Positions 29,475-64,000 of a stretch of DNA of 64,000 bases are shown here, piece by piece (the stretch's first letter is position 1; every line of letters starts with the position of its first letter). The DNA is taken from NCBI GenBank assembly GCA_002269645.1, contig NIVC01002516.1, positions 1 to 64,000 on the forward strand, written 5' to 3'. Under the pieces are notes generated by a model. That model was given only the letters and a program-made list of their open reading frames with translations, searched no databases and was not told where the DNA came from. The translations under genes and the position numbers were made by a program. The stretch comes from Macrostomum lignano (Eukaryota).

Positions 29475-29695
29475 TCATATTGTACATTTAGACAGATTCT
29501 GATATTGTACATTTAGACAGATTCTGATATTGTACATTCAGACAGATTCTGACATGTACATTTAGACAGATTCTGATATGTACATTTTGACAGATTCTGA
29601 TATGTACATTTAGACAGATTCTGATATGTACATTTAGACGGATTCTGCTATGTACATTCAGACAGATTCTGCTATGTACATTTAGATGGATTCTG
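29475..29695. repeat. 24/25-bp satellite, left block
   Basis: (gtacatttagacagattctgatat[t])n, same unit as 31966-36300. Confidence 0.95.
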
Positions 29696-37570: not shown

Positions 37571-37984
37571 TGTGGTGACTTGGCTGGGCTAATTGTTGTT
37601 AGTGTTGTTAGCATGTACTTTATTCATTGTTTTGGAGGTGGTGTTTTTACCCGTTTCACTACGTGCGTCTTTCGAAAATATGTTCGTTCTTACTCATGTA
37701 CGCTCTTTATTCTAGCCGCTCTTGCTCTCCACCCCTAAGCCTTATCCACCCAATGTATCGTGCTCAACAATTACAGTATAAATCGCAGTCACTTGACTCA
37801 TATCAAGCGTATATCGTTCTACAATCTAAAGTGAAATCTTTACACTGGCGACGATCCATGAGCTTGTTGGGCTCAATTGAACCCTTTGAAGAGGGGACTG
37901 AAAAATGGCAGCAATATCAAGCCAGACTGGAGCACAGTTTTTCGAGGCGAACGACATCAAACCTGAAGAGCAGCGTGCGGTCCT
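37571..37984 (+). mobile_element. LTR-like segment, PBS and gag start of a Gypsy-type element (truncated)
   Basis: TG-initial segment ending tttaca, followed by TGGCGACGAT (37846-37855) and ATG 37858 MSLLGSIEPFEEGTEKWQQYQARLEH/FFEANDIKPEEQRAVL (one frameshift), a typical gag N-terminus. Confidence 0.65.
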
Positions 37985-38187
37985 TGTGGTAACTTGGCCT
38001 GCGTGCGCGCCGGGGGCGGGTGCTGTGTGTGGGTTAAGTTGTTTTTGATCTCTCGCAACTCTGGCTGAATGTACTTTGCTAGCGCGGGGTGGGTGGTTAG
38101 GGTGAGTCAGACGATCGATAATAAATTGTTTCAGTATAAAGCTGGCTTTTCAGCCTGCAAAGTTGTTTGTGTTTTTGTGTCACAACA
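37985..38187. mobile_element. LTR-like segment interrupting the gag start
   Basis: TGTGGT...ACAACA ends with internal aataaa and tataaa. No TSD identified. Confidence 0.35.
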
Positions 38188-38519
38188 AAGTTCGGACTTG
38201 ACTTTATTTCAGTCCTTCTGAGCGTCTGTGGCAGGAAGACCTACCTTTAGGGCTTTTATAAACAACCACCTGAGTTCGATTGCTCTGAACCTCTTAGCCA
38301 ATTTCTGTAATTCGCTTACATGTATATGAAATTTCGCTCGAAAAGTCTAGAAGAACCACGGATGAAAAATCTCATCGGTAAACTTTTGCGGGAAAATTTC
38401 TACAGGAAACTCCCATGCTCCCCCGTCCGTCCGCCCCCCGACAGCAGATTCCTCAATCGTTGCCAGGCCTTCTGTGATCTTCACTGCATGATGAGCCGAG
38501 TCGGAGTCAGTCTCAGGGT

Positions 38520-40720
38520 CGCAGCTTTCAAAACTGAGTCTGACAAAGCGTCTGCATCTTGAGTTTTCCTTCCTGGCCCATATTCGATCTCATAGTCATT
38601 AGCCGACAATCTCAAGTCCACTGGGTCAATCTGGCTGAAATCATCTTTGGAAGATTTTTGCTTGGGTTTAGGATGTATTTTAAAGGCTCATCAGTCTGAA
38701 GAGTGAATTTTTTTCGAGCCCGTTCAACAGCCCAATCTATCGCCAACGCTTCCCTCTCGATGTTCGAATAGTTGGTTTCTGCTTGTGAGAGCGCCCTGGA
38801 CATGAACATTTACGATGTTACGGGATGGCCCGACTGGACGAGCACAGCACCCAAAGATTTCTCACTAGCATCGACCCTAAGACAGACTGGTAAGCAGACA
38901 TCAAACGGCTTGATGCATGGATTGAAACCCAGATTTTCTTGACATCAGCGAATGCCGATCAGCACATCATCCTGGTAAACTATCACACATCTCCAATAAG
39001 CTTCTCCGTTTCGCGTTGAAAAATTGAGGTGACACCTTGATATCATAAGGCAGCCGAGTGTTAATCGTTATTACTGCCTTGGACTCTTCATTCAAAGGAA
39101 TCTGGTAGTAAGCATCCGACAGAATGGCTTTTTGTTGGCCATCTTAGAGAAGGCTGCTTCTATTGATGGCGTTAGGTAAATCTGGTCCTGCACCCATCGA
39201 TTAACCACTGAATAGTCTCCACAGATTCTCACAGATGCTAGGTCAGACTTCGCTGCTACGACAATTGGACTGCCCCATTCAGAAGACGTTACCTTTTCAA
39301 CAATTCCAGCACCTTCCATCAGATTCAACTCCTTCTTATCTAAATGCCTCAACGCTAAAGGAGTTCCCTGGCTGGCAGGAAGATTGGTTTCACTCCAGCG
39401 CAAAGGCAAATTTCTTCCATAGCACCAGAAATTCCCAACAAGCTCTCACACCTGTCACTGGCCGCTGGTTCTGCAGAGTTTGCATGGTGCACTGTTGTGG
39501 GAGTCTGCAGATTCTGGCCGAGCAACCCGAACTCTTGTTGACAGTCAATGACGGCAGCTCGGTAGTCCTGAATTGGCTTTTGCTGCCGCCGGTCTCCACC
39601 AGGCACTCCAGAACGCTCAGCTGTCTCATCACATGTTCGTCGTAGGCCAACATGCGCGGCTTCGCCATTTTAAGAGGTGCCCTTCCGAGCTCATTCCAGA
39701 TCCTCCGGGAGATCAACGAACAGGAGGCACCACCGTCTTTCTCCATCCTCATTTCCTTGTTTCCTTGTTTTCCTTGTCAAAACACGAGCTCATCACATCG
39801 GCCTTTTGAGCTCAACTGGATGCCAGTGGCTTCAATCGGCGCCGCAATGTGGGTCCTGGCGCTCCGGCACACGCATGAGAAGTGATCTGGCTTTCCGCAC
39901 TGATGGCAGGTGGCCCTCAGGACGTGGCAGTCGGCTGGATTGTGGTGCGACCACTGCCCACAACGCTGAAAACGCTGAGATTGTAAGTTCCTCAGTTTTT
40001 GCTTCTCCACGGCATTCACACAGTCTGAACCTTAAAGATTGTTGAGAGCATCAGCAGCAGAGACTGGCGCTTGGGTTGACGGCGACCTGGCCCGGTGCAC
40101 CAACGAATCCACCGAAGCAGCGATCGCCATATGCTCGGTAGAAAATTTGCTGACCATCAGTAACTGCTGCACATCGTCGTTGACTTGATCGACTGACAGC
40201 TCCTGATTCACTTCACGCTCCAGCACCTTGTTCCTGATGTCCTGGTTGGCCAGGCCGGCAATGAGCCGCAATTAAATGAGCTATTCTGCTGGATCCGCTC
40301 TCTTGACTTTCAGTTTCTCAAACTTGCACGTGACAGCTTGCTCCGTCAGACGGGCAGCACTGCTGGCGACAGTCTCACCTTCGGCTTGGTGCATAGACAC
40401 GAAGGAGGTCCGTTCGGCGATCAGCAACTAATTCTTGGGCTTCATGAACAGCAGCAGACTTGCCTTGATAGCAGACCATTTGAGCTCAGACACGGTCTTC
40501 GGAGTCACCAGTTGTTTAACTTTAACCCACCAGAAAGGCATCTGTCAGCGCTGGTCTTTCATCGGTGTCTTCAATTCCTTTCGATCTGGCTTGTGCATCA
40601 AAAACTGATCCATGCAGAAAGCTCTTCTGTGTTGTTTATCGGCAACGTTTCTCTCAGTTTGATACTCGTCCTGCTTATGACTACGAGCGTAGACAAACTG
40701 ACAAGTTTAGTCATATTTGC
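38520..40720 (-). pseudogene. Decayed Ty3/Gypsy gag-pol (gag, twin Zn knuckles, protease, RT, RNase H)
   Basis: RLIAGLANQDIRNKVL; CGQW..H..DC..ATCHQCGKPDHF..C; protease-like DGGASCSLIS; SEWGSPIVV..VRICGDY; YQDD; VDAS; YSNIEREALAI. Many frameshifts and stops. Confidence 0.9.
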
Positions 40721-44699: not shown

Positions 44700-45289
44700 A
44701 GGAATAGAAATATAAAAGTGAAGATCAACATAGATTACATTCTTTCGACGCGTTTCGGTCCAACAAGGGCCATCTTCAGGTCTGGTGTATTTTTAGTCAC
44801 ACAACAACTTTTATAAGAGATAAGCGAACAAATGTTTACTGTATAGTCCAAGGGGCATATCATGGGCAGAATTTTCAAAGTAAATGAGCAGCAGATTACG
44901 AGTACATTGTTCAGGTTTGTGCCTTCACTTAGAACATCTTGAGCAAATGGCCCGCACCACTATGGGAGAGCTGAATATTCAGATTTGGTTTTTGGTTTTT
45001 AATAGTGTACATGGATTCAAGTATATGAAGCCTAAAGTCAGTCCTACACCGATAAATAATTTTGAACTGCTGAGTTTGCTCAATTTCGCAACAACTGTTG
45101 CAACAGAGCAGGTGGTCTTGGATAGCCGACCTTTTCAACCAATGCTCTCTGACTCTGGTGTAAAAGTGCCTTTTAGTTTTACCTAAATTTCGCAACAACT
45201 GTTGCAACAGAGCAGGTGGTCTTGGATAGCCGACCTTTTCAACCAATGCTCTCTGACTCTGGTGTAAAAGTGCCTTTTAGTTTTACCTA
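44700..45289 (-). mobile_element. 3' fragment of a Penelope-like retroelement (GIY-YIG endonuclease C-terminus and 3' UTR)
   Basis: GKTKRHFYTRVREH..SAIQDH..C..C..FKII..LHILESM.I..QKPNLNIQ*, followed by the typical ctgaagatgg..ccgaaacgcgtc motif. Confidence 0.8.
44747..44779 (-). ncRNA. Minimal hammerhead ribozyme motif of Penelope type (stem I degenerate)
   Basis: CTGAAGA-tggcccttgttggacc-GAAA-CGCG-TC: conserved core, imperfect stem II, palindromic stem III and a GUC cleavage triplet. Confidence 0.6.
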
Positions 45290-45510
45290 CTAGCAATCTA
45301 CGCCCCCCGTTGGGGAGCCAAAGAAATGCAATACACGTTTTTTTAATAAGCTACATGTATCCTTGAAATCTTAAAAAATCTCCTGTCAAACCTTGTAAGC
45401 CTTGACATGTCAGTTATCCCCCCACAAGCTTTAACATATCAACTTCCCCCCTTGACATCTCAGCAATGCCCCCAATAAGCCTTGGAAATCTAAAAATATC
45501 TGTCAACCTT

Positions 45511-45572
45511 CTAACCCTAACCCTAGCCTAACCCTAACCCTAACCCTAACCCTAACCCTAACCTAACCCTAA
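45511..45572. repeat. Interstitial telomeric (CCCTAA)n tract; also at 50738-50778, 55757-55818, 59999-60032
   Basis: About 5-10 direct CCCTAA units at the equivalent position in each complete Helitron-like unit. Confidence 0.95.
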
Positions 45573-46489
45573 AGCATTGAAATTTCAGTAATTCTCCCCA
45601 AGAGTCATTATAGCACTACTACAGCATTATAGCGATTCCTTGCAAGCCTCAACATCGTAGGGATTCCCAAATGAATCTCTTAACTTCGACATGAAGCTTC
45701 TTTTATTTTTTACATTACGCTTTTTTATCAGCGATCCCTCCCCTGAGGAGGCATCAAATAATGTAATAAAAAGTTTTCAATAAACTACATGTAGCTTCTG
45801 ACTTTAGCCTTGAAATCTCATTTATACCCCCGTGAGCCTTGACATCTCAGCTATTCCCCCCGTAAGCCTTGACATGTCAGCAATGGCCCCCATAAACCTT
45901 GAAATCTAAAAAATCCCCTGTTAACCTTGAAACCCGATAAAATATAACCCTCAACCCACACCTGACCTAAACCTAACTTTAACCCAACCTAAAGCCTTGA
46001 AATCTCAGCAATTCTTCTCCCCTAAGCCTTAACATTTTAGTGATTCTTTCTTTAAGAATCACAGCACTATAACGATTTCCACCAAGCTTTGACATCGTAG
46101 CAATTCCCAAATGAATCTTTTAACTTCGACATGACTTTTCTTTTATGTATACATAGTGCTACTTTTATTTTTTACATGACTTTTCTTCTATCAGCGCCCC
46201 CCCCCGTGACGAGCCAACAAAGAATGCAAAAAAAAATGGAGTAAAGTGCATGAACTTTGAAGTAGCTTCTGACTTTTGCTTTGACATCTCAGAAACCCCC
46301 CCGTAATCTCAGTTATTCTCTGAGAGCCTTGACGTCTCAGTTTTTCTCCCCAGCACAGCATTATAGTTGCATTTAATTTTTACATGAACCTTTCATGTCT
46401 GACATGACGTTTCTTTTATTCTACCGTGACGCTTCCTAATTTTTTAAATGACACTTTCATTAGTTTTTAAATGAGGCTTCTATGATTTT

Positions 46490-49400
46490 TTCTTGACGCT
46501 TCTATGATTTTTACATGACGCTTCTATGATTTTTTACATGACGCTTCTATGATTGTTTACACGACGCTTCTATGATTTTTATATGACGTTTCTATGATTG
46601 TTTACATGACGCTTCTATGATTGTTTACATGACGCTTCTATGATTGTTTACAGTACGCTTCTATGATTTTTTCTTGACGCTTCTATGATTTTTACATGAC
46701 GCTTCTATGATTTTTTACATGACGCTTCTATGATTGTTTACATGACGCTTCTATGATTTTTATATGACGTTTCTATGATTGTTTACATGACGCTTCTATG
46801 ATTGTTTACATGACGCTTCTATGATTGTTTACAGTACGCTTCTATGATTTTTTACATGACGCTTCTATGATTGTTTACATGACGCTTCTATGATTGTTTA
46901 CATGACGCTTCTATGATTTTTTACATGACGCTTCTATGATTGTTTACATGACGCTTCTATGATTGTTTGCATGACGCTTCTATGATTGTTTACATGACGC
47001 TTCTATGATTGTTTACATGACGCCTCTACGATTTTTTACATGACGCTTCTATGATTGTTTACATGACGCTTCTATGATTGTTTACATGACGCTTCTATGA
47101 TTGTTTACATGACGCTTCTAAGATTTTTTACATGACGCTTCTATGATTGTTTACATGACGCTTTTATGACTTTTTACATGACGCTTCTAAGATTCTTTAC
47201 ATGACGCTTCTAAGATTTTTTACATGACGCTTCTACGATTGTTTACATGACGCTTCTATGATTGTTTACATGACGCTTCTATGATTGTTTACATGACGCT
47301 TCTAAGATTTTTTACATGACGCTTCTATGATTGTTTACATGACGCTTTTATGACTTTTTACATGACGCTTCTAAGATTTTTTACATGACGCTTCTAAGAT
47401 TTTTTACATGACGCTTCTACGATTTTTTACATGACGCTTCTATGATTTTTTACATGACGCTTCTATGATTTTTTACATGACGCTTCTATGATTTTTTACA
47501 TGACGCTTCTATGATTTTTTACATGACGCTTCTATGATTTTTTACATGACGCTTCTATGACTGTTTACATGACGCTTCTATGATTTTTTAATGACGCTTC
47601 TATGATTTTTACATACGCTTCTATGATTTTTACATGACGCTTCTATGATTTTTTAAATGACGCTTCTATGATTGTTTACATGACGCTTCTATGATTGTTT
47701 ACATGACGCTTCTATGATTGTTTACATGACGCTTCTATGATTTTTACATGACGCTTCTATGATTGTTTACATGACGCTTCTATGATTGTTTACATGACGC
47801 TTCTATGATTGTTTACATGACGCTTCTATGATTTTTACATGACGCTTCTATGATTGTTTACATGACGCTTCTATGATTGTTTACATGACGCTTCTATGAT
47901 TTTTTACATGACGCTTCTACGATTTTTTACATGACGCTTCTATGATTGTTTACATGACGCTTCTATGATTGTTTACATGACGCTTCTATGATTGTTTACA
48001 TGACGCTTCTAAGATTTTTTACATGACGCTTCTACGATTTTTACATGACGCTTCTATGATTGTTTACATGACGCTTCTATGATTGTTTACATGACGCTTC
48101 TAAGATTTTTTACATGACGCTTCTACGATTTTTTACATGACGCTTCTATGATTGTTTACATGACGCTTCTATGATTGTTTACATGACGCTTCTAAGATTT
48201 TTTACATGACGCTTCTACGATTTTTTACATGACGCTTCTATGATTGTTTACATGACGCTTCTATGATTGTTTACATGACGCTTCTAAGATTTTTACATGA
48301 CGCTTTATGATTTTTTAATGACGCTTCTACGATTTTTTACATGACGCTTCTATGATTGTTTACATGACGCTTCTATGATTGTTTACATGACGCTTTTATG
48401 ATTTTTACATGACGCTTCTATGATTGCTTCATGACGCTTCTATGATTGTTTACATGACGCTTCTATGATTGTTTACATGACGCTTCTATGATTGTTTACA
48501 TGACGCTTCTATGATTGTTTACATGACGCTTCTATGATTGTTTACATGACGCTTCTATGATTGTTTACATGACGCTTCTATGATTGTTTACATGACGCTT
48601 CTATGATTGTTTACATGACGCTTCTATGATTGTTTACATGACGCTTCTATGATTGTTTACATGACGCTTCTATGATTGTTTACATGACGCTTCTATGATT
48701 TTTACATGACGCTTCTATGATTGTTTACATGACGCTTCTATGATTTTTACATGACGCTTCTATGATTTTTACATGACGCTTCTATGATTGTTTACATGAC
48801 GCTTCTATGATTGTTTCATGACGCTTCTATGATTGTTTACATGACGCTTCTATGATTGTTTACATGACGCTTCTATGATTGTTTACATGACGCTTCTATG
48901 ATTTTTACATGACGCTTCTATGATTGTTTACATGACGCTTCTATGATTGTTTACATGACGCTTTTATGATTTTTCATGACGCTTCTATGATTGTTCATGA
49001 CGCTTCTATGATTGTTTACATGACGCTTCTATGATTGTTTACATGACGCTTCTATGATTGTTTACATGACGCTTCTATGATTGTTTACATGACGCTTCTA
49101 TGATTGTTTACATGACGCTTCTATGATTGTTTACATGACGCTTCTATGATTGTTTACATGACGCTTCTATGATTGTTTACATGACGCTTCTATGATTGTT
49201 TACATGACGCTTCTATGATTGTTTACATGACGCTTCTATGATTGTTTACATGACGCTTCTATGATTTTTACATGACGCTTCTATGATTGTTTACATGACG
49301 CTTCTATGATTTTTACATGACGCTTCTATGATTTTTACATGACGCTTCTATGATTTTTACATGACGCTTCTATGATTGTTTACATGACGCTTCTATGATT

Positions 49401-49900
49401 GTTTACATGACGCTTCTATGATTGTTTACATGACGCTTCTATGATTGTTTACATGACGCTTCTATGATTGTTTACATGACGCTTCTATGATTGTTTACAT
49501 GACGCTTCTATGATTGTTTACATGACGCTTCTATGATTGTTTACATGACGCTTCTATGATTTTTAATGACGCTTCTATGATTGTTTACATGACGCTTCTA
49601 TGACTGTTTACACAACGCTTCTATGATTTTTTTAAAAATGACGCTTCTATGATTTTTATATAACGCTTCTACGATTTTTTACATGGCGCTTCTATGATTT
49701 TTTAAATGACGCTTCTATGATTGTTTACATGACGCTTCTATGATTGTTTACATGACGCTTCTATGATTTTTTACATGACGCTTCTATGATTTTTTACATG
49801 ACGCTTCTATGATTGTTTACATGACACTTCTATTATTTTTTACATGACGCTTCTATGATTTTTATATGACGCTTCTATGATTTTTTACATGATGCTTCTT
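46490..49900. repeat. 23-bp satellite in unit 1
   Basis: (atgacgcttctatgattgtttac)n with 22/23-bp T-run variants. Confidence 0.99.
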
Positions 49901-50509
49901 TTTAAAAAGTCTTTTAGTTTTCCTGACGTTGAAAAGCTTTAATTAAAAAAATTGTACTCTATGAAAATTCGAACCATCGTCGCTGCATTTGGCAGTTCAG
50001 TTTGTTCACCTCTAGGCTAGCTCTCATCGTTTTGATAACATCAAATTTTGCACTTATATAATTCAACACTTTAAAATCCAAGCATAGAGTAAATCACACG
50101 AAGCAGTTATGACATAATCAGTTTCTCAGTCAGTCAGTATCAGTTAACAATATGGTTACGCAATTTAAATCAAGTCTGGTGCTACGCTTCCACACTGTAT
50201 TTTCAATTCAAGTCGGAGGTACAATTCAGTTATGATGCAATCTATTTCAGAATCAGAATTCAACCAGTCAGTTTTTTCTCTAGCATTCTTACAATGCATT
50301 TCAAGTCGAAAGAGCTGCTTGACCTTTGCAAGAAAGCATGTTTTTCGAATATTTAATGCCTTTAGCATCGAGCAATTTCTTAGCCACGATGCATGTACAG
50401 TCACGGGAAAATTTCTGATCGAACAGTGCAAGTTCGAACAAAATCGGTCCAGCCATTTTTTCTCTAATCGATTACAAGCAAGCAAGATTTTCATTTTTAG
50501 TATATTGGA

Positions 50510-53500
50510 CTAGCAATCAGCGCCCCCCGTTGGGGAGCCAAAAAATACAGCACAAGTTTTTTAATAAACTACATATAAGCGTCTCTTTGCATTATACCTC
50601 AGCAACCCCTTGTAAGCCTTGACATGCCAGCAATTCCTCCCCCCCCCCACAAGCCTTAGCATATCAACTCCCCCTTGACATCTTAGCAATTCCCCCCATA
50701 AGCCTTGAAATCTTAAAAAATCTGTTAACCTTCTAAACCTAACCCTAACCCTAACCCTAACCCTAACCCTAACCCTAAAGCATTGACATTTCAGTAATTC
50801 TCTCCGAGAGTCATTATAGCACTACAGCATTATAGCGATTCCCTGCAAGCCTCGACATCGTAGGGATTCCCAAATGAATCTCTTAACTTCGACATGAAGC
50901 TTCTTTTATTTTTTACATTACACTTTATCTATCAGCGATCCTTCCCGTGAAGAGCCAATAAATAATGAAAACATTTTTCAATAAACTACATCATCTACAT
51001 GTAGCTTGTGAATTTAGCCTTGACATCTCGGTTATTCCCCCGTGAGCCTTGACATCTCAGCTATTCCCCCCGTAAGCCTTGTCATGTTAGCGATGCCCCC
51101 ATAAACCTTGATATCTTAAAAATCCCCTGTTAATCTTGAAACCCGCTAAAATCTAACCATCAACCCAAACCTGACCTAAACCTAACTTTAACCCAACCTA
51201 AAGCCTTAAATCTCAGCAATTCTTCTCCCCTAAGCCTTGACATTTTAGTGATTCCTTATTTAAGAATCACAGCACCATAGCGATTCCCTCCAAGCCTTGG
51301 CATCGTAGCAATTCCCAAATGAATCTTTTAACTTTGACATAATGACTCTTCTTTTATGTATACATAGTGCTTCTTTTCTTTTTTACATGACTCTTCTTCT
51401 ATCAGCGCCCCCTCCCCCGTAGCGAGCCAACAAAGAATGTAATAAAAAATTAAGTAAACTACATGTACTTTGAAGTAGCTTCTGACGTTTGCTACTTTGC
51501 TTCTCTGGCATCTCAGAAACCGCCTCCCCAAAATCTCAGTTATTCTCCGTGAGCCTTGACATCTTAGTAATTCTCCCCAGCACAGCACAATAGCTTCTTT
51601 TAATTTTTACATGACACTTCTTTCATGTCTGACATGACGCTTCTTTTATTCTTCCATGACGCTTCTATGATTTCTCAAATGACACTTCCATTAGTTTTTA
51701 TATGAGGCTTCTATGATCTTTTGATGACGCTTCTATGATTGTTTACATGACGCTTCTATGATTGTTTGCATGACGCTTTATGATTTTTACATGACGCTTC
51801 TATAATTGTTTGCATGACGCTTCTATGATTTTTACATGACGATTCTATGATTGTTTACATGACGCTTCTATGATTGTTTACATGACGCTTCTATGATTTT
51901 TTACATGACACTTCTATGATTGTTTACATGACGCTTCTATGATTGTTTGCATGACGCTTCTATGATTTTTTCATGACGCTTTTATGATTGTTTACATGAC
52001 GCTTCTATGATTTTTACATGACGCTTCTATGATTGCTACAAGACGCTTCTATGATTTTTTGCATGACGCTTCTATGATTTTTTCATGTCGCTTCTATGAT
52101 TTTTACATGACGCTTCTATGATTGTTTACAAGACGCTTCTATAATTTTTTACATGACGCTTCTATGATTTTTATATGACGCTTCTACGATTTTTTACATG
52201 ACGCTTCTATGATTGTTTACATGACGCTTCTATGATTTTTTACATGACGCTTCTATGATTGTTTATATGACGCTTCTATGATTTTTTACATGACGCTTCT
52301 ATGATTGTTTACATGACGCTTCTATGATTTTTTACATGACGCTTCTATGATTTTTACATGACGCTTCTATGATTTTTTTCATGACGCTTCTATGATTTTT
52401 ACATGACGCTTCTACGATTGTTTGCCTGACGCTTCTATGATTGTTTGCATGACGCTTCTATGACTGTTTACATGACGCTTCTATGATTTTTACATGACGC
52501 TTCTATGATTGTTTACATGACGCTTCTATGATTGTTTATATGACGCTTCTTTGATTTTTACATGACGCTTCTATGATTGTTTACATGACGCTTCTATGAT
52601 TTTTTACATGACGCTTCTATGATTGTTTACATGACGCTTCTATGATTGTTTACATGACGCTTCTATGATTTTTTTAAAAGACGCTTCTATGATTTTTACA
52701 TGACGCTTCTATGATTTTTACATGACGCTTCTATGATTTTTACATGACGCTTTTATGATTGTTTACATGACGCTTCTATGATTGTTTACATGACGCTTCT
52801 ATGATTGTTTACATGACGCTTCAGTGATTGTTTACATGACGCTTCTATGATTTTTTACATGACGCTTCTATGATTGTTTACATGACGCTTCTATGATTGT
52901 TTACATGACGCTTCATGATTGTTTACATGACGCTTCTATGATTTTTTACATGACGCTTCTATGATTGTTTACATGACGCTTCTATGATTTTTTACATGAC
53001 GCTTCTATGATTGTTTACATGACGCTTCTATGATTGTTTATATGACGCTTCTATGATTTTTTTAAAAGACGCTTCTATGATTGTTTATATGACGCTTCTA
53101 TGATTTTTTTAAATGAAGCTTCAGTGATTGTTTATATGACGCTTCTATGATTTTTTACATGACGCTTCTATGATTTTTTACATGACGCTTCTATGATTTT
53201 TTACATGACGCTTTATGATTGTTTACATGACGCTTCAGTGATTGTTTATATGACGCTTCGATGATTTTTTACATGACGCTTCTATGATTGTTTACATGAC
53301 GCTTCTATGATTGTTTACATGACGCTTCTATGATTGTTTATATGACGCTTCTATGATTTTTTCATGACGCTTTTATGATTTTTACATGACGCTTTTATGA
53401 TTGTTTACATGACGCTTCTATGATTGTTTACATGACGCTTCTATGATTGTTTACATGACGCTTCAGTGATTGTTTACATGACGCTTCTATGATTTTTACA

Positions 53501-55534
53501 TGACGCTTCTATGATAGTTTACATGACGCTTCTATGATTGTTTACATGACGCTTCATGATTGTTTACATGACGCTTCTATGATTGTTTACATGACGCTTC
53601 TATGATTGTTTACATGACGCTTCTATGATTGTTTACATGACGCTTCTATGATTGTTTACATGACGCTTCTATGATTGTTTATATGACGCTTCTATGATTT
53701 TTTTAAAAGACGCTTCTATGATTGTTTATATGACGCTTCTATGATTGTTTACATGACGCTTCTATGATTGTTTATATGACGCTTCTATGATTTTTTAAAT
53801 GACGCTTCTATGATTTTTTACATGACGCTTCTATGATTTTTTACATGACGCTTCTATGATTTTTTACATGACGCTTCAGTGATTGTTTATATGACGCTTC
53901 GATGATTTTTTACATGACGCTTCTATGATTGTTTACATGACGCTTCTATGATTGTTTACATGACGCTTCTATGATTGTTTATATGACGCTTCTATGATTT
54001 TTTCATGACGCTTTATGATTTTTACATGACGCTTTATGATTGTTTACATGACGCTTCTATGATTGTTTACATGACGCTTCTATGATTGTTTACATGACGC
54101 TTCAGTGATTGTTTACATGACGCTTCTATGATTTTTACATGACGCTTCTATGATTGTTTACATGACGCTTCTATGATTGTTTACATGACGCTTCAGTGAT
54201 TGTTTACATGACGCTTCTATGATTTTTTACATGACGCTTCTATGATTGTTTACATGACGCTTCTATGATTTTTTACATGACGCTTCTATGATTGTTTACA
54301 TGACGCTTCTATGATTGTTTATATGACGCTTCGATGATTTTTTTAAAAGACGCTTCTATGATTGTTTATATGACGCTTCTATGATTTTTTACATGACGCT
54401 TTTATGATTGTTTACATGACGCTTCAGTGATTGTTTATATGACGCTTCGATGATTTTTTACATGACGCTTCTATGATTGTTTACATGACGCTTCTATGAT
54501 TGTTTATATGACGCTTCTATGATTTTTTCATGACGCTTTTATGATTTTTACATGACGCTTCTATGATTGTTTACATGACGCTTCAATGATTGTTTACATG
54601 ACGCTTCTATGATTTTTTCATGACGCTTTTATGATTTTTACATGACGCTTCAATGATTGTTTACATGACGCTTCTATGATTGTTTATATGACGCTTCTTT
54701 GATTTTTACATGACGCTTCTATGATTGTTTGCATGACGCTTCTATGATTTTTTACATGACGCTCCTATGATTGTTTACATGACGCTTCTATGATTGTTTA
54801 CATGACGCTTCTATGATTTTTTAAAAGACGCTTCTATGATTTTTACATGACGCTTTTATGATTTTTGACATGACGCTTCTATGATTTTTACATGACGCTT
54901 CTATGATTTTTACATGACGCTTCTTTTTAAAAAGTCTTTTAGTTTTCCTGACGTTGAAAAGCTTTAATTAAAAAAATTATACTCTATGAAAATTCGAACC
55001 ACCGTCGCTGCATTTAGCAGTTCAGTTTGTTCACCTCTAGGCTAGCTCTCATCGTTTTGATAACATCAAATTTTGCACTTATATAATTCAACACTTTAAA
55101 ATCCAAGCATAGAGTAAATCACACGAAGCAGTTATGACATAATCAGTTTCTCAGTCAGTCAGTATCAGTTAACAATTATGGTTACGCAATTTAAATCAAG
55201 TCTGTGCTACGCTTCCACACTGCATTTTCAATTCAAGTCGGAGTTACAATTCAGTTATGATGCAATCTATTTCAGAATCAGAATTCAACCAGTCAGTTTT
55301 TTCTCTAGCATTCTTACAATGCATTTCAAGTCGAAAAGTTTGCTTGACCTTTGCAAAAAAGCATGTTTTTCGAATATTTAATGCCTTTAGCATCGAGCAA
55401 TTTCTTAGCCACGATGCATGTACCGTCACGGGAAAATTTCTGATCGAACAGTGCAAGTCTCATAAAAATCGGTTAAGCCATTTTTTCTCTAATCGATTAC
55501 AAGCAAGCAAGATTTTCATTTTTAGTATATTGGA
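50510..55534 (-). mobile_element. Non-autonomous Helitron-like unit 2
   Basis: Same termini; CTAG|TC junctions on both sides. Confidence 0.85.
51720..54925. repeat. 23-bp satellite in unit 2
   Basis: Same monomer. Confidence 0.99.
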
Positions 55535-56719
55535 CTAGCAATCTACGCCCCCCGTTGGGGAGCCAAAGAAATGCAATACACGTTTTTTTAATAAGCTACA
55601 TGTATCCTTGAAATCTTAAAAAATCTCCTGTCAAACCTTGTAAGCCTTGACATGTCAGTTATCCCCCCCACAAGCTTTAACATATCAACTTCCCCCCTTG
55701 ACATCTCAGCAATGCCCCCAATAAGCCTTGGAAATCTAAAAATATCTGTCAACCTTCTAACCCTAACCCTAGCCTAACCCTAACCCTAACCCTAACCCTA
55801 ACCCTAACCTAACCCTAAAGCATTGAAATTTCAGTAATTCTCCTAAGAGTCATTATAGCACTACTACAGCATTATAGCGATTCCTTGCAAGCCTCAACAT
55901 CGTAGGGATTCCCAAATGAATCTCTTAACTTCGACATGAAGCTTCTTTTATTTTTTACATTACGCTTTTTTATCAGCGATCCCTCCCCTGAGGAGGCATC
56001 AAATAATGTAATAAAAAGTTTTCAATAAACTACATGTAGCTTCTGACTTTAGCCTTGAAATCTCATTTATACCCCGTGAGCCTTGACATCTCAGCTATTC
56101 CCCCCGTAAGCCTTGACATGTCAGCAATGGCCCCCATAAACCTTGAAATCTAAAAAATCCCCTGTTAACCTTGAAACCCGATAAAATATAACCCTCAACC
56201 CACACCTGACCTAAACCTAACTTTAACCCAACCTAAAGCCTTGAAATCTCAGCAATTCTTCTCCCCTAAGCCTTAACATTTTAGTGATTCTTTCTTTAAG
56301 AATCACAGCACTATAACGATTTCCACCAAGCTTTGACATCGTAGCAATTCCCAAATGAATCTTTTAACTTCGACATGACTTTTCTTTTATGTATACATAG
56401 TGCTACTTTTATTTTTTACATGACTTTTCTTCTATCAGCGCCCCCCCCGTGACGAGCCAACAAAGAATGCAATAAAAAAATGGAGTAAAGTACATGAACT
56501 TTGAAGTAGCTTTTGACTTTTGCTTTGACATCTCAGAAACCCCCCCGTAATCTCAGTTATTCTCTGAGAGCCTTGACGTCTCAGTTTTTCTCCCCAGCAC
56601 AGCATTATAGTTGCATTTAATTTTTACATGAACCCTTCATGTCTGACATGACGTTTCTTTTATTCTACCGTGACGCTTCTTAATTTTTTAAATGACACTT
56701 TCATTAGTTTTTAAATGAG

Positions 56720-57610
56720 GCTTCTATGATTTTTTCTTGACGCTTCTATGATTTTTACATGACGCTTCTATGATTTTTTACATGACGCTTCTATGATTGT
56801 TTACATGACGCTTCTATGATTTTTATATGACGTTTCTATGATTGTTTACATGACGCTTCTATGATTGTTTACATGACGCTTCTATGATTTTTTACATGAC
56901 GCTTTTATGATTTTTACATGACGCTTCTATGATTTTTTACATGACGCTTCTATGATTTTTACATGACGCTTCTATGATTTTTACATGACGCTTCTATGAT
57001 TTTTACATGACGCTTCTATGATTTTTACATGACGCTTCTATGATTTTTTACATGACGCTTCTATGATTGTTTACATGACGCTTCTATGATTGTATACATG
57101 ACGCTTCTATGATTGTTTACATGACGCTTTTATGATTGTTTACATGACGCTTCTATGATTTTTACATGACGCTTCTATGATTTTTACATGACGCTTCTAT
57201 GATTTTTACATGACGCTTCTATGATTGTTTACATGACGCTTCTATGATTGTTTACATGACGCTTCTATGATTGTTTACATGACGCTTCTATGATTGTTTA
57301 CAGTACGCTTCTATGATTTTTTACATGACGCTTCTATGATTGTTTACATGACGCTTCTATGATTGTTTACATGACGCTTCTATGATTGTTTACATGACGC
57401 TTCTATGATTGTTTACATGACGCTTCTATGATTTTTACATGACGCTTCTATGATTTTTACATGACGCTTCTATGATTTTTTACATGACGCTTCTATGATT
57501 GTTTACATGACGCTTCTATGATTTTTACATGACGCTTCTATGATTGTTTACATGACGCTTCTATGATTGTTTACATGACGCTTGTATGATTGTTTACATG
57601 ACGCTTCCAT
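56720..57610. repeat. 23-bp satellite in unit 3
   Basis: Same monomer, shorter array. Confidence 0.98.
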
Positions 57611-57764
57611 AATTTTTTTGTCTTGGCGTTAAAAGGCTTTAATTAAAAAAACTCTACTCTCTAAAAATTCGAACCATCGTCCCTGCATTTAGCAGTTTAG
57701 TCTGTTTACCTCTAGGCTAGCTCTCATGAATTTTAGTCATTACCCCTAAATAGAAAATATTCCC

Positions 57765-58930
57765 AAGACAGCAAGCATCCCCCAGTAGCAAGCATCCCCT
57801 AATACTCCTAGCAAGCATCCACCCAGATAGCAAGCATCTGCAGATAGCAAGCATCTTGCAGATAGCAAGCATCTTTCAGATAGCAAGCATACCCCAAATA
57901 ATGTAGAAGCATCCTTCCAGATAGCAAGCATCCTGCACATAGCAAGAATCCCTAAATAGCAAGCATCCCTGGATAGAAATAATCCTATACATGTAGCCAA
58001 GCTTATCAAGCGCAGTAATCCTTGGCTATCGAGTGCAGTAATCCTTGGTTTATTAATAGCAATAATCCATGGCTTATCGAGTGCAGTAATCCTTGGTTTA
58101 TTAATAGCAATAATCCTTGGCTTATCGAGTGCAGTAATTCATGGTTTATTAATAGCAATAATCCTTGGCTTATCGAGTGCAGTAATCCTTGGTTTATTAA
58201 TAGCAATAATCCATGCCTTATCGAGTGCAGTAATCCTTGGTTTATTAATAGCAATAATCCTTGGCTTATCGAGTGCAGTAATCCTTGGTTTGCCAAGTGC
58301 ATAATCCTTGGTTTATTAATAGCAATAATCCTTGGTTTATCGAGTGCAGTAATCCTTGGTTTATTAATAGCAATAATCCTTGGCTTATCGAGTGCAGTAA
58401 TCCTTGGTTTATTAATAGCAATAATCCATGGCTTATCGAGTGCAGTAATCCTTGGTTTGCCAAGAGCAATAGTCCTTGGCTTATCGAGTGCAGTAATCCT
58501 TGGTTTGCCAAGAGCAATAGTCCTTGGTTTATTGAGTGCAGTAATCCTTGGTTTATTAATAGCAATAGTCCTTGGTTTATTGAGTGCAGTAATCCTTGGT
58601 TTATTAATAGCAATAATCCTTGGCTTATCGAGTGCAGTAATCCTTGGTTTGCCAAGTGCATAATCCTTGGTTTATCGAGTGCAGTAATCCTTGGTTTATT
58701 AATAGCAATAATCCTTGGCTTATCGAGTGCAGTAATCCTTGGTTTATTAATAGCAATAATCCATGGCTTATCGAGTGCAGTAATCCTTGGTTTGCCAAGA
58801 GCAATAGTCCTTGGCTTATCGAGTGCAGTAATCCTTGGTTAATTAATAGCAATAGTCCTTGGTTTATTGAGTGCAGTAATCCTTGGTTTATTAATAGCAA
58901 TAATCCTTAGCTTATCGAGTGCAGTAATCT
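57765..58930. repeat. tagcaagcatc ~20-bp array followed by 48-bp (2x24) higher-order array in unit 3
   Basis: ttatcgagtgcagtaatccttgg alternating with tttattaatagcaataatccttgg. Confidence 0.96.
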
Positions 58931-60989
58931 AAGTGTTTTTATTTAGTCCTTTAATAAAAGCTTTTAATAAAAAATTTTACACTACTACTTTTAAACTACT
59001 TAGATTCGAACCCAGGTCGCTGCATTAGCAGTCTGGTCTGCTCAGCTCTAGGCTAGCTCTCATCGAAGTTATCAGTGAATTTGTACCACTTATATAATTC
59101 AACACTCACACCAAGTCAGGTAGAGTAAAAAGTCACACGAAGCAGTTATGACATAATCAATTTCTTAGGCAAGTCAGTACCAGTGTCTATGAAAGTTAAC
59201 AATATGGTTACGTAATATAGATTCAGTACTGCACTATACTTTCACCCTCAAAGCTGTGACGCAATTCAATTGAGTGTCAAATTCAGCCAGTACACAGACG
59301 ATAAATAAAGTGTATTGTGATGCAATCTATTTCAGAATCAGAATTCAACCAGTCAGATTTTTCTCTAGCATTCTTACAATGCATTTCAGGTCGAAAGAGC
59401 TGCTTGACCTTTGCAAAAAATCATGTTTTTCGAATATTTAATCCCTTTAACATTGAGCAATTTCTTAGCCAATATGCATGTACCGTCCCGGGAAAATTTC
59501 TGATCGAATGGTGCAAGTTTGAAGAAAATCGGTTGAGCCGTTCGGGAGAAAATCAATTACAAGCAAGAAACCAAGCATTTCATTTTTAGTATATTAGACT
59601 AATCGATTACAAGCAAGCAAGATTTTCATTTTTAGTATATTAGAAGACTAGCAATCTAGCGCCCCCCTTCGGGGTGGCCAATAAGCAAGGGACGAATCCT
59701 TTAAAATGAAAAAAAATTCTTAGGGAGGGGGGCTAGGAATCGAATTCTCATTTTAATTCCAGGCTTATGTACCAATAAAACATGCTTGTGCAGAATTTTA
59801 TAACAGACATTGAAATTCAACCATACTTGCCTTCTTTCAGAGCTACTTCTACCAGTATGCTTCAGTACGCTACCAGTACCCTTGTAAGCCTTGACATGTC
59901 AGCAATCCCCCCCCACAAGCCTTAACATATCAACTCCCCCCTTGACATCTCAGCGATGCTCCCATAAGCCTTGAAATCTTAAAAAATCTGTCTACTTTCT
60001 AACCCTAACCCTAACCCTAACCCTAACCCTAAAGCATTGAAATTTCAGTAATTCTCTCTAAGAGTCATTATAGCACTACTACAGCATTATAGCGATTCCC
60101 TGCAAGCCTCGACATCGTAGGGATTCCCAAATGAATCTCTTAACTTCGACATGAGGCTTCTTTTATTTTTTACATTACGCTTTTTCTATCAGCGATCCCT
60201 CCCGTGAGGAGCCAACAAATAATGTAATAAAAAGTTTTCAATAAACTACATGTAGCTTCTGACTTTAGCCTTGACATCTCAGTTATTTCCCCATGAGCCT
60301 TGACATCTCAGCTATAGATAGATAGATAGATACGAGTAGATTCCCCTCGTAAGCCTTGACATGTCAGCGATGCCCCCCATAAACCTTGAAATCTAAAAAA
60401 TCCCCTGTTAACCTTGAAACCCGCTAAAATATAACCCTCAACCCAAACCTGACGTAAACCTAACTTTCACCCAACCTAAAGCCTTGAAATCACAGCAATT
60501 CTTCTTCCCTAAGCCTTGGCATTTAAGTGATTCCTTCTTTAAGAATCACAGCACTATAACGATTCCCTCCAAGCTTTGACATTGTAGCAATTCCCAAATG
60601 AATCTTTTAACTTTGACATGACTTTTATTTTATGTATACATAGTGCTCCTTTTATTTTTACATGACTCTTCTTCTATCAGCGCCCCCCCCCCACCGTGGA
60701 AAGCCAACAAAGAATACAATAAAAAAACTTAAGTAAAGTACATGTACTTTGAAGTAGCTTCTGACTTTTGCTTTAACATCTCAGAAACCCCCCTGTAATC
60801 TCAGTTATTCTCTGTGAGCCTTGACGTCTCAGTAATTCTCCCCAGCACAGCACTATAGCTTCATTTAATTTTTATATGACACTTCTTTCATGTCTGACAT
60901 GACGCTTCTTTTGATTTTTAAATTACGCTTCTTTTATTCTTCCATGAAGCTTCTTAATTTTTTAAATGACACTTTCATTAGTTTTTATA

Positions 60990-61745
60990 TGAGGCTTCTA
61001 TGATTTTTTCATGACGCTTCTATGTTAACATGACGCTTCTATGCTTGTTTACATGACGCTTCTATGATTGTTTACATGACGCTTGTATGATTGTTTACAT
61101 GACGCTTCTATGATTTTTTACATGACGCTTCTATGATTTTTACATGACGCTTCTATGATTTTTACATGACGCTTCTATGATTTTTTCATGACGCTTCTAT
61201 GATTTTTACATGACGCTTCTATGATTTTTACATGACGCTTCTATGATTTTATACATGAGGCTTGTATGATTGTTTACATGACGCTTCTATGATTGTTTAC
61301 ATGACGCTTCTATGATTTTTTATGACGCTTTTATGATTTTAACATGACGCTTCTATGATTTTTTTACATGACGCTTCTATGATTGTTTACATGACGCTTG
61401 TATGATTGTTTACATGACGCTTCTATGATTGTTTACAGTACGCTTCTATGATTTTTTACATGACGCTTCTATGATTGTTTACATGACGCTTCTATGATTG
61501 TTTACATGACGCTTCTATGATTGTTTACATGACGCTTCTATGATTGTTTACATGACGCTTCTATGATTTTTACATGACGCTTCTATGATTTTTACATGAC
61601 GCTTCTATGATTGTTTACATGACGCTTCTATGATTGTTTACATGACGCTTCTATGATTTTTACATGACGCTTCTATGATTGTTTACATGACGCTTCTATG
61701 ATTGTTTACATGACGCTTGTATGATTGTTTACATGACGCTTCCAT
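60990..61745. repeat. 23-bp satellite in unit 4
   Basis: Same monomer, shorter array. Confidence 0.98.
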
Positions 61746-61899
61746 AATTTTTTTGTCTTGGCGTTAAAAGGCTTTAATTAAAAAAACTCTACTCTCTAAA
61801 AATTCGAACCATCGTCCCTGCATTTAGCAGTTTAGTCTGTTTACCTCTAGGCTAGCTCTCATGAATTTTAGTCATTACCCCTAAATAGAAAATATTCCC

Positions 61900-63115
61900 A
61901 AGACAGCAAGCATCCCCCCAGTAGCAAGCATCCCCTAATACTCCTAGCAAGCATCCACCCAGATAGCAAGCATCTGCAGATAGCAAGCATCTTGCAGATA
62001 GCAAGCATCTTTCAGATAGCAAGCATACCCCAAATAATGTAGAAGCATCCTTCCAGATAGCAAGCATCCTGCACATAGCAAGAATCCCTAAATAGCAAGC
62101 ATCCCTGGATAGAAATAATCCTATACATGTAGCCAAGCTTATCAAGCGCAGTAATCCTTGGCTATCGAGTGCAGTAATCCTTGGTTTATTAATAGCAATA
62201 ATCCATGGCTTATCGAGTGCAGTAATCCTTGGTTTATTAATAGCAATAATCCTTGGCTTATCGAGTGCAGTAATTCATGGTTTATTAATAGCAATAATCC
62301 TTGGCTTATCGAGTGCAGTAATCCTTGGTTTATTAATAGCAATAATCCATGCCTTATCGAGTGCAGTAATCCTTGGTTTATTAATAGCAATAATCCTTGG
62401 CTTATCGAGTGCAGTAATCCTTGGTTTGCCAAGTGCATAATCCTTGGTTTATTAATAGCAATAATCCTTGGTTTATCGAGTGCAGTAATCCTTGGTTTAT
62501 TAATAGCAATAATCCTTGGCTTATCGAGTGCAGTAATCCTTGGTTTATTAATAGCAATAATCCATGGCTTATCGAGTGCAGTAATCCTTGGTTTGCCAAG
62601 AGCAATAGTCCTTGGCTTATCGAGTGCAGTAATCCTTGGTTTGCCAAGAGCAATAGTCCTTGGTTTATTGAGTGCAGTAATCCTTGGTTTATTAATAGCA
62701 ATAGTCCTTGGTTTATTGAGTGCAGTAATCCTTGGTTTATTAATAGCAATAATCCTTGGCTTATCGAGTGCAGTAATCCTTGGTTTGCCAAGTGCATAAT
62801 CCTTGGTTTATCGAGTGCAGTAATCCTTGGTTTATTAATAGCAATAATCCTTGGCTTATCGAGTGCAGTAATCCTTGGTTTATTAATAGCAATAATCCAT
62901 GGCTTATCGAGTGCAGTAATCCTTGGTTTGCCAAGAGCAATAGTCCTTGGCTTATCGAGTGCAGTAATCCTTGGTTTGCCAAGAGCAATAGTCCTTGGTT
63001 TATTGAGTGCAGTAATCCTTGGTTAATTAATAGCAATAGTCCTTGGTTTATTGAGTGCAGTAATCCTTGGTTTATTAATAGCAATAATCCTTAGCTTATC
63101 GAGTGCAGTAATCTA
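61900..63115. repeat. Same two arrays in unit 4, one extra 48-bp unit
   Basis: The offset between units 3 and 4 changes from 4136 to 4184 bp across this array. Confidence 0.96.
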
Positions 63116-63831
63116 AGTGTTTTTATTTAGTCCTTTAATAAAAGCTTTTAATAAAAAATTTTACACTACTACTTTTAAACTACTTAGATTCGAACCCAGG
63201 TCGCTGCATTAGCAGTCTGGTCTGCTCAGCTCTAGGCTAGCTCTCATCGAAGTTATCAGTGAATTTGTACCACTTATATAATTCAACACTCACACCAAGT
63301 CAGGTAGAGTAAAAAGTCACACGAAGCAGTTATGACATAATCAATTTCTTAGGCAAGTCAGTACCAGTGTCTATGAAAGTTAACAATATGGTTACGTAAT
63401 ATAGATTCAGTACTGCACTATACTTTCACCCTCAAAGCTGTGACGCAATTCAATTGAGTGTCAAATTCAGCCAGTACACAGACGATAAATAAAGTGTATT
63501 GTGATGCAATCTATTTCAGAATCAGAATTCAACCAGTCAGATTTTTCTCTAGCATTCTTACAATGCATTTCAGGTCGAAAGAGCTGCTTGACCTTTGCAA
63601 AAAATCATGTTTTTCGAATATTTAATCCCTTTAACATTGAGCAATTTCTTAGCCAATATGCATGTACCGTCCCGGGAAAATTTCTGATCGAATGGTGCAA
63701 GTTTGAAGAAAATCGGTTGAGCCGTTCGGGAGAAAATCAATTACAAGCAAGAAACCAAGCATTTCATTTTTAGTATATTAGACTAATCGATTACAAGCAA
63801 GCAAGATTTTCATTTTTAGTATATTAGAAGA

Positions 63832-64000
63832 CTAGCAATCTAGCGCCCCCCTTCGGGGTGGCCAATAAGCAAGGGACGAATCCTTTAAAATGAAAAAAAA
63901 TTCTTAGGGAGGGGGGCTAGGAATCGAATTCTCATTTTAATTCCAGGCTTATGTACCAATAAAACATGCTTGTGCAGAATTTTATAACAGACATTGAAAT
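63832..64000 (-). mobile_element. 3' end of Helitron-like unit 5 (runs off the window)
   Basis: Matches 59648-59816. Confidence 0.85.

What the first reader, a model, noticed from the sequence alone, without database searches (positions are those of the whole stretch)
45290..64000. Head-to-tail concatemer of at least five non-autonomous Helitron-like elements
Seen: four junctions at 50509/50510, 55534/55535, 59647/59648 and 63831/63832 read ...CTAG|TC... on the minus strand with no host DNA between them. Each 3' end has a GC hairpin ~12 nt before CTAG, and the outermost CTAG is followed by T. The hairpin is preserved through sequence change (GCTCCCC-AAC-GGGGGGC versus GCC-A-CCCC-GAA-GGGG-GGC). 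The 5' region carries an (A/T)GGCT.(G/A)ACCGATTTT motif like that of Lep1/DINE-type rolling-circle elements. Established: TC...hairpin-CTRR termini, A|T insertion and no TSD define Helitrons, and rolling-circle replication can yield tandem arrays. Inference: this is an uncatalogued 4-5 kb non-autonomous family amplified as a macrosatellite that carries three kinds of satellite, telomeric repeats and Pol III-like boxes. No RepHel ORF is present, so mobilisation would be in trans.
Basis: partly seen in the sequence, partly recalled or inferred. Interest (0 to 1): 0.85.

Follow-up and report, generated by a model that had tools for sequence, protein, structure and literature searches.

The report
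Tandem array of satellite-carrying Helitron elements
The last 18.7 kb of the window is a head-to-tail row of non-coding 4-5 kb repeat units whose ends look like those of Helitron rolling-circle transposons; both such arrays and satellite-carrying Helitrons are already known, so this is a probable new family of a familiar kind, not a new kind of element.

Summary
On the minus strand, four complete units (5220, 5025, 4113 and 4184 nt) and a fifth partial one abut directly as ...CTAG|TC.... The array stops exactly at CTAG|T at 45290.

Three features mark this junction as a discrete terminus, not an arbitrary repeat phase:
- The array edge coincides with it.
- The last ~34 nt (hairpin, 8-9 nt, CTAG) are conserved in three otherwise unrelated subterminal contexts.
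- The 5' end is duplicated over 49 nt, starting right at the junction.

There are no terminal inverted repeats, Pfam domains or Rfam/tRNA matches.

Each unit has a 5' region, one or two satellites, and three degenerate ~460-nt modules with G-rich 30-mers, TTAGGG repeats and a terminus-like hairpin.

Unit identities are mosaic. U1 and U3 3' halves are 99-100% identical at 10.2-kb spacing, across a unit that is 81-91% identical. The array was therefore also reshaped by unequal exchange.

Not supported: the Lep1/DINE motif claim, the Pol III boxes, and true compensatory change in the terminal hairpin.

Not testable here: dispersed copies at A|T sites, and a RepHel partner. No public collection searched held this sequence.

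Helitron tandem arrays and satellite-carrying Helitrons are published, so this is a probable new member of a known kind.

The parts
45290..50509 (-). Unit U1 (type A, 5220 nt): TC...CTAG, the outermost unit at the array edge
50510..55534 (-). Unit U2 (type A, 5025 nt); its last 120 nt are 82% identical to U1
55535..59647 (-). Unit U3 (4113 nt), a recombinant: 5' 1.9 kb is type B (96-100% to U4) and 3' 2.1 kb is type A (97-100% to U1)
59648..63831 (-). Unit U4 (type B, 4184 nt), with a different subterminal 3' region of 196 nt
63832..64000 (-). Unit U5, only the 3' 169 nt, 100% identical to the 3' end of U4; cut by the window end
45290..45323 (-). 3' terminal island of U1: TTGG + hairpin GCTCCCCAACGGGGGGC (45302-45318) + GTAGATTG + CTAG. 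The same island lies at 50510-50543 and 55535-55568; the B variant with a bulged hairpin lies at 59648-59683 and 63832-63867
50464..50509 (-). 5' terminal ~46 nt, TCCAATATACTAAAAATGAAAATCTTGCTTGCTTGTAATCGATTAG; the same in U2 at 55489-55534
59599..59647 (-). Extra 49-nt copy of the 5' end in type B, ending TTAG|TC and followed by a second 5' end; the same at 63783-63831
50225..50455 (-). About 230-nt 5' block conserved between types A and B, starting with the GGCTNNACCGATTTT motif (50440-50454); no conserved ORF and no Pfam match
49939..50028 (-). Loosely tRNA-like segment with GGTTCGAA, placed just 5' of a satellite. Also at 54964-55053, 58975-59064 and 63159-63248, with second copies near 57675 and 61810 in type B
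   Evidence: negative
46430..49896 (-). 23-bp satellite of U1, about 150 copies (minus-strand unit CATAGAAGCGTCATGTAAAAAT.). Also about 51540-54924 (U2), 56620-57617 (U3, 44 copies) and 60868-61752 (U4, 39 copies)
58003..58929 (-). 24/48-bp satellite, type B only; also at 62139-63113. Followed by an 18/59/94-bp repeat at 57761-57969 and 61945-62104
45290..46340 (-). 3' composite region made of degenerate ~460-nt modules (46340-45806 aligns with 45880-45398 at 68% over 554 nt). The modules end in the terminus-like TTGGCTC..C.ACGGGG..CGCTGAT at about 46188, about 45726 and 45290; only the last carries TTGCTAG
45526..45572 (-). (TTAGGG)n on the element strand. Also at 50738-50778, 55772-55818 and 60003-60032; a decayed copy lies in the preceding module at about 45960-46010
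45806..45907 (-). G-rich 30-mers (GGGGG..ATTGCTGAGATGTCAAGGCTTAC). There are 10 matches to the core, all inside the array, against 0 expected
45082..45289 (-). 3' flank: an exact 2.0-copy tandem duplication of 104 bp. It begins at the first base after CTAG, and each copy ends in the hairpin GCAACAGTTGTTGC + GAAATT

Best explanation
This is a tandem array of non-autonomous, canonical-type (TC...hairpin...CTAG) Helitron-derived elements in a metazoan genome.

Inferred life cycle, following the Helraiser model (PMC4778049):
- A RepHel transposase supplied in trans nicks 5' of TC.
- It unwinds the TC...CTAG strand, pauses at the subterminal hairpin, and cuts after CTAG.
- It joins the ends into a circle whose junction is CTAG-TC. 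That is the junction seen four times here.

The first head-to-tail copies arose in one of two ways. Termination may have been bypassed on such a circle or on a dimer. Alternatively, a new copy may have inserted into the A|T dinucleotide formed by the host A and the resident element's first T; that also gives CTAG|TC with no host DNA.

Shown here: the array was afterwards remodelled by unequal exchange or gene conversion. This produced a recombinant unit (U3) and a two-unit periodicity of 10.2 kb.

Each element is itself layered. It has a 5' end region, captured or expanded satellites, and three decayed copies of a ~460-nt module that already carried G-rich 30-mers, TTAGGG repeats and a terminator-like hairpin. 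This implies an older round of the same multimerisation or 3'-end renewal.
For: 1. TC/CTAG junctions and CTAG|T at the array edge.
2. The hairpin-plus-CTRR-plus-T signature is expected at about 2e-5 per position, yet it sits exactly at the array edge.
3. The last ~34 nt are about 85% conserved between the U1 and U4 ends. The 65-196 nt upstream of them cannot be aligned, and there are three subterminal variants: U1=U3, U2, and U4=U5. This fits constraint on a terminus.
4. A 49-nt duplication of the 5' end starts at the junction.
5. No inverted repeats span the junctions.
6. The units are non-coding.
7. Internal terminus-like modules exist. One of them shows a compensatory pair, CTCC/GGAG against CTTC/GAAG in U2.
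8. Identities are mosaic: U1-U3 3' parts 99.4-100%, U1-U2 81-91%, U3-U4 5' parts 100%.
9. Literature: the canonical definition, and tandem Helitron arrays in Myotis and Bombyx ascribed to bypassed termination (PMC4067079); arrays in Xenopus (PMC12001565); precise CTAG-TC circle junctions (PMC4778049).
Against: - No copy outside the array was seen, so mobility is not shown. The other 45 kb of the window has none, and no public collection searched contains the sequence.
- The 5' flank lies beyond the window, so the A of the A|T target and the absence of a target duplication are untested.
- No RepHel partner was found.
- The hairpins are C-run/G-run pairings with weak z-scores.
- All junctions pair like with like (A3'|A5' or B3'|B5'), so the junctions are not independent events.
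- If the 104-bp flank repeat continues on the far side of the array, the target would be T|T, not A|T.
Confidence: 0.72

Rival explanations
1. This is an ordinary macrosatellite: a 4-5 kb complex repeat amplified only by unequal crossing-over, unrelated to Helitrons. The TC/CTAG/hairpin match would then be a coincidence.
For: Mosaic identities and the 10.2-kb periodicity show recombination-driven dynamics. The whole window is unusually rich in tandem repeats. No dispersed copy was seen. Hairpin z-scores are weak.
Against: The array edge, the conserved 34-nt island in three unrelated contexts, and the 5'-end duplication all pick out the same junction. That junction carries a signature expected at about 2e-5 per position, and the next unit starting with TC adds a further factor of 1/16.
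Confidence: 0.13
2. This is a non-autonomous Helentron/Helitron2 (HINE, DINE-1-like) element, as the reader's Lep1/DINE comparison implies.
For: It carries central tandem repeats and a microsatellite-like tract, as DINE-1/HINE and bivalve elements do (PMC4067079, PMC8268682). If the 104-bp repeat junction ...AAATT|TAGG... is a paralogous empty site, the target would be T|T.
Against: No terminal or subterminal inverted repeat is shared across unit types; the only match is a 10-nt AT-rich one in type B. The ends are TC and CTAG, with a single hairpin 12-13 nt from the 3' end, which is the canonical Helitron pattern.
Confidence: 0.06
3. This is an assembly artefact: a single element, or a few, was expanded into an array by misassembly of satellite-rich reads.
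For: Long identical stretches exist: U1/U3 3' 1.25 kb at 99-100%, U3/U4 5' 334 nt at 100%, and U4/U5 169 nt at 100%. Satellite-rich regions are error-prone.
Against: The units differ in length, satellite content and subterminal sequence. There are two architectures and three 3' variants, and neighbouring units are 81-96% identical. Collapse or false duplication would give identical copies.
Confidence: 0.05

Closest known systems
Tandem arrays of canonical Helitrons (Myotis lucifugus Helibat, Bombyx mori, Xenopus laevis Heli1Xen1/Heli2Xen, plant centromeric Helitrons)
   Same: Head-to-tail copies joined end to end and ascribed to bypassed termination in rolling-circle transposition (PMC4067079; PMC12001565; Xiong et al. 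2016, as cited in PMC8268682). The ends are TC/CTAG with a 3' hairpin.
   Different: Xenopus monomers are 121-1996 nt in 2-7 copies. Here the units are 4.1-5.2 kb, of two architectures, and each carries kilobase satellites. The plant model yields truncated units lacking 3' ends, whereas these units are complete. The present array also shows clear recombinational remodelling.
Helraiser circle junction (reconstructed bat Helitron)
   Same: The 5' TC is joined precisely to the CTAG 3' end, and the hairpin acts as a termination signal about 10 nt from the end (PMC4778049).
   Different: That junction was seen in extrachromosomal circles in an experiment. Here it is chromosomal, repeated, and has no known transposase.
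Satellite-carrying non-autonomous Helitron/Helentron elements of bivalves and Drosophila (Cg_HINE, Helitron-N_Cgi, DINE-1/DINE-TR1)
   Same: Short conserved end boxes flank internal tandem repeats. In Crassostrea gigas, satellite DNAs with ~2-kb monomers are annotated as Helitron (PMC8268682).
   Different: Those elements have subterminal inverted repeats and T-rich targets (PMC4067079). No such repeats are present here. They usually carry ~160-bp satellites of about 6 monomers, not 23-24-bp satellites of 40-150 copies.
Lep1 non-autonomous Helitrons
   Same: Lep1 has a nested 3' structure: an original CTRY terminus followed by acquired sequence that ends in a new CTRR (PMC4038834). This recalls the internal terminus-like hairpin + CTGA|T modules here.
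   Different: No sequence similarity could be tested.
Paramecium telomere-capping Helitrons
   Same: They are Helitrons rich in satellites and higher-order repeats, and they are associated with telomeric repeats (PMC13085455).
   Different: There the telomeric repeats flank the ends, because insertion is into telomeres, and the elements encode a distinct RepHel clade. Here the TTAGGG repeats are internal, about 230-350 nt from the 3' end, and the elements are non-coding.

Membership tests
Canonical Helitron (Helitron1) | 5' terminus TC | tested here: met
   All four visible 5' ends start with TC (TCCAATATAC / TCTTCTAATATAC), and so does the second 5' copy in type B.
Canonical Helitron (Helitron1) | 3' terminus CTRR | tested here: met
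   All five visible 3' ends are CTAG.
Canonical Helitron (Helitron1) | 16-20 nt palindrome/hairpin about 10-12 nt from the 3' end | tested here: met
   A 17-18 nt hairpin with a 7-bp stem ends 12-13 nt from the end. Its stability is modest against shuffles (z -0.9 to -2.0).
Canonical Helitron (Helitron1) | Insertion between A and T without target-site duplication | tested here: inconclusive
   T follows the outermost CTAG. The 5' flank is beyond the window. The 104-bp repeat junction AAATT|TAGG hints at a possible T|T site if it is a paralogous empty site.
Canonical Helitron (Helitron1) | No terminal inverted repeats | tested here: met
   No inverted repeat between the 5' and 3' end regions is shared by the junctions.
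Canonical Helitron (Helitron1) | Dispersed copies, polymorphic or paralogous empty sites (evidence of mobility) | not testable with these tools
   No copy lies in the other 45 kb of the window. There were no matches in the metagenome, GTDB-genome or viral collections, or in the literature text. The source genome is not available.
Canonical Helitron (Helitron1) | Autonomous RepHel-encoding partner with the same termini | not testable with these tools
   The array has no ORF of 110 aa or more apart from satellite read-throughs and no Pfam domain in its translated unique regions. The source genome could not be searched.
Helentron / HINE / DINE-1 | Subterminal inverted repeats, with palindromes at both ends | tested here: not met
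   One search found only a 10-nt AT-rich match in type B and none in type A.
Helentron / HINE / DINE-1 | Insertion into TT | tested here: inconclusive
   Only the 3' flank (T) is visible.
   ARAGORN found 0 genes. Rfam had no match at gathering score or at E<=1 over the array, and no tRNA match at E<=10 on the segment alone. Only a B-box-like GGTTCGAA is present.

The most novel reading that the evidence does not exclude
The array may be part of a chromosome-end or subtelomeric architecture built by a self-targeting Helitron family. New copies would insert into the A|T formed by the host A and the resident 5' T, so the array grows from its 5' side. The elements point away from the nearby chromosome end, as Paramecium's telomere-capping Helitrons do. 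The internal TTAGGG tracts and G-rich 30-mers on the displaced strand would then be relics of, or substrates for, telomerase or telomere-protein interaction. This would be a metazoan counterpart of Helitron-structured chromosome ends.
Probability: 0.07. Interest if true: 0.6.

Novelty: new member of a known kind. Interest (0 to 1): 0.3.

Why it matters
If confirmed genome-wide, this family would be a clean natural example of three steps in one locus:
- a Helitron picking up and expanding short-unit satellites;
- renewal of its 3' end by module multimerisation;
- seeding of a macrosatellite that then evolves by unequal exchange.

That is one route from transposon to satellite DNA. The internal TTAGGG tracts also make it a possible source of interstitial telomeric sequences. 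None of this changes current models; it adds a well-resolved case.

Tried and rejected
- Exact-pattern scans with two element motifs found nothing in JGI metagenome contigs, GTDB genome contigs or IMG/VR. One motif was the conserved 5' block and the other the G-rich 30-mer core.
- Identifying the host failed. An EGF exon gave no homologues. The mariner fragment gave only a 61% hit from an unnamed ENA contig. Four exact-protein look-ups of window ORFs, including two satellite ORFs of the element, were not on record.
- Four element strings were not found in the full-text library.
- Rfam (gathering score; E<=1 on the array; E<=10 on the tRNA-like segment) and ARAGORN gave no RNA family.
- Pfam on the translated unique regions found nothing. 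These were the element-strand frames of the U1 and U4 5' and 3' regions, plus the opposite-strand frames of the U1 5' region.
- The Lep1/DINE 5' motif is not in the texts of PMC4038834 or PMC4067079.
- A paper linking Helitron and TTAGGG (manatee, PMC9323068) proved irrelevant.
- A Helitron-like 3' signature at 44448 on the minus strand, 840 nt beyond the array, is within chance expectation and has no other element feature.
- A 52-codon ORF in the conserved 5' block of type A has no ATG in type B, and its A/B differences are mostly amino-acid changing, so I rejected it as coding.

Full report
**Observation**

Window positions 45290-64000 are AT-rich (GC 0.33-0.38, against 0.43-0.54 for most of the rest). 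The region is organised as long direct repeats spaced 4.1-5.2 kb apart.

GACTAG on the plus strand occurs at 50508-50513, 55533-55538, 59646-59651 and 63830-63835, and only once elsewhere in the window. The units are:
- U1: 50509->45290 (5220 nt)
- U2: 55534->50510 (5025 nt)
- U3: 59647->55535 (4113 nt)
- U4: 63831->59648 (4184 nt)
- U5: a 169-nt stub cut by the window end

Nothing lies between the units. Homology stops exactly at ...GATTGCTAG|T at 45290, after which unrelated DNA follows.

**Is the junction a real terminus or an arbitrary phase?**

Three observations that do not depend on each other point to the same spot.

1. The edge of the array falls on it. A loose Helitron 3' signature (GC-rich hairpin, 4-12 nt, CTRR, T) is expected about 2.4 times per 64-kb window on both strands, about 2e-5 per position. 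That the next unit starts with TC adds a factor of 1/16.
2. There are three different subterminal contexts: U1=U3, U2, and U4=U5. The last 120 nt are 100%, 82% and 68% identical respectively.
   - In U4 the 196 nt upstream of the hairpin are unrelated to the 65 nt at the same place in U1.
   - Both nevertheless converge on the same final ~34 nt: TTGGC(T/CA)CCCC(AAC/GAA)GGGGGGCG(C)TAGATTGCTAG.
   - Conservation confined to the tip is what a cis-acting terminus shows.
3. Type-B units carry an extra 49-nt copy of the 5' end. It begins right at the junction and ends TTAG|TC before the second 5' end.

The hairpins fold as 7-bp stems ending 12-13 nt from the end. Their z-scores are weak (-0.9 to -2.0) because C-runs and G-runs also pair in shuffles. 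The difference between the two terminal variants is one-sided, not compensatory.

**Anatomy**

Type A (U1, U2) has the following order:
- a 5' region of about 610 nt;
- a 23-bp satellite of about 3.4 kb;
- a 3' region of about 1.25 kb.

Type B (U3, U4) has its own 5' region, then a 24/48-bp satellite (~0.95 kb), then an 18/59/94-bp repeat. After that it continues with an A-like cassette: the tRNA-like segment, about 1 kb of 23-bp satellite, and the 3' region.

The 5' region holds a ~230-nt block conserved between A and B. It starts with GGCTNNACCGATTTT, which is found only in the array.

The 3' region is itself a degenerate tandem of ~460-nt modules (68% identity over 554 nt). Each module has G-rich 30-mers (10 core matches, all in the array), TTAGGG repeats that are intact in the last module and decayed in the one before, and a terminus-like 'TTGGCTC..C.ACGGGG..CGCTGAT'. 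Only the last module has the TTGCTAG tail. One internal hairpin shows a compensatory pair, CTCC/GGAG in U1, U3 and U4 against CTTC/GAAG in U2.

No inverted repeats link the two ends. The array has no ORF of 110 aa or more other than satellite read-throughs, no Pfam domain in the translated unique regions, and no Rfam or tRNA match.

**Array history**

Unit identities are mosaic:
- The 3' 1.25 kb of U1 and U3 are 99.4-100% identical at 10,245-bp spacing. U2, which lies between them, is 81-91% identical to both.
- The 5' ends of U3 and U4 are 100% identical over 334 nt.
- U3 is a B-5'/A-3' recombinant, with the switch inside the 23-bp satellite.

The latest events were therefore a two-unit duplication or conversion and an unequal exchange, not unit-by-unit rolling-circle copying. 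All junctions pair like with like (A3'|A5' or B3'|B5'), so they are not independent insertion events.

**Interpretation**

The features match the published definition of canonical Helitrons: 5' TC, 3' CTRR, a 16-20 nt palindrome about 11 nt from the end, an A|T target, and no TSD or TIR (PMC4067079; PMC13085455).

The CTAG-TC junction is the one found in Helraiser circles. In that system the hairpin acts as the termination signal, and read-through creates new 3' ends (PMC4778049).

Tandem Helitron arrays are reported in Myotis, Bombyx, Xenopus and plants, and are ascribed to bypassed termination. A second route follows from the target rule: insertion into the A|T made by the host A and the resident element's first T also gives CTAG|TC. 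This second route is my inference.

Satellite-carrying Helitron/Helentron elements are well documented, as are kilobase 'satellites' annotated as Helitron in oyster.

**Limits**

Several things could not be tested:
- mobility, that is solo copies and empty sites;
- the 5' target base;
- a RepHel partner.

The host is a metazoan. The evidence is CUB and calcium-binding EGF exons on the minus strand at 0.4-25.4 kb, a mariner HTH fragment, and TTAGGG repeats. It is absent from every collection I could query. I could not compare the element with Repbase or Dfam, so 'uncatalogued' remains unverified.

**Verdict**

The Helitron reading is well supported by structure (confidence about 0.7) but is not proven by mobility evidence. 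The Lep1/DINE, Pol III and covariation claims are not supported. This is a probable new member of a known kind, of modest interest.

Noticed in passing
window 45082-45289: An exact 2.0-copy tandem duplication of a 104-bp unit begins at the very first base after the element's CTAG. Each copy ends with the hairpin GCAACAGTTGTTGC followed by GAAATT. The coincidence of the duplication boundary with the Helitron end (roughly 1 in 100 by phase) is unexplained. If the repeat continues beyond the array's 5' edge, the insertion site was T|T.
   Followed up: partly
window 400-25400, minus strand: These are exons of a multi-domain CUB / EGF / calcium-binding EGF gene (Pfam CUB E=1e-7 to 5e-8; cEGF and EGF_CA E=5e-10 to 2e-9). 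They are separated by introns packed with minisatellites of 12-42-bp units in 13-62 copies, and by long microsatellites: (ATC)131 at 6059-6451 and (TGTC)175 at 24534-25227, the latter abutting an EGF exon ORF.
   Followed up: partly
window 29481-36300: A 25-bp satellite (176 copies, 4.3 kb, GC 0.29) lies at 31968-36300, and the same unit recurs at 29481-29695. Between them are a mariner HTH fragment (30871-31242, minus strand, HTH_48 E=2e-8) and a weak reverse-transcriptase fragment (31473-31991, plus strand, RVT_1 E=1e-3). The satellite appears to have been split by transposon insertions.
   Followed up: partly
window 49939-50028, 54964-55053, 57600-57675, 58975-59064, 61740-61810, 63159-63248 (minus strand): A ~70-nt segment with a B-box-like GGTTCGAA sits immediately 5' of each satellite block inside the elements. 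From memory, its layout resembles a tRNA-Ser(GCT) gene. ARAGORN and Rfam do not call it; it may be a decayed tRNA-derived (SINE-like) capture.
   Followed up: partly
window 46430-49896 and the other 23-bp satellite blocks: Every 23-bp monomer carries TGACGC (plus strand), a bZIP/CRE-like half-site. That gives about 380 copies within 18 kb. This may be chance and was not examined.
   Followed up: no
window 37600-40050: Short ORFs on both strands look like LTR-retrotransposon gag and aspartic-protease remnants (for example DGGASCSLIS). Pfam gave no match at E<=0.01, so this rests on appearance only.
   Followed up: partly
window 25290-25370, plus strand: Another isolated GGTTCGAATC (B-box-like) lies next to the (TGTC)n tract. 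ARAGORN does not call it as a tRNA.
   Followed up: no
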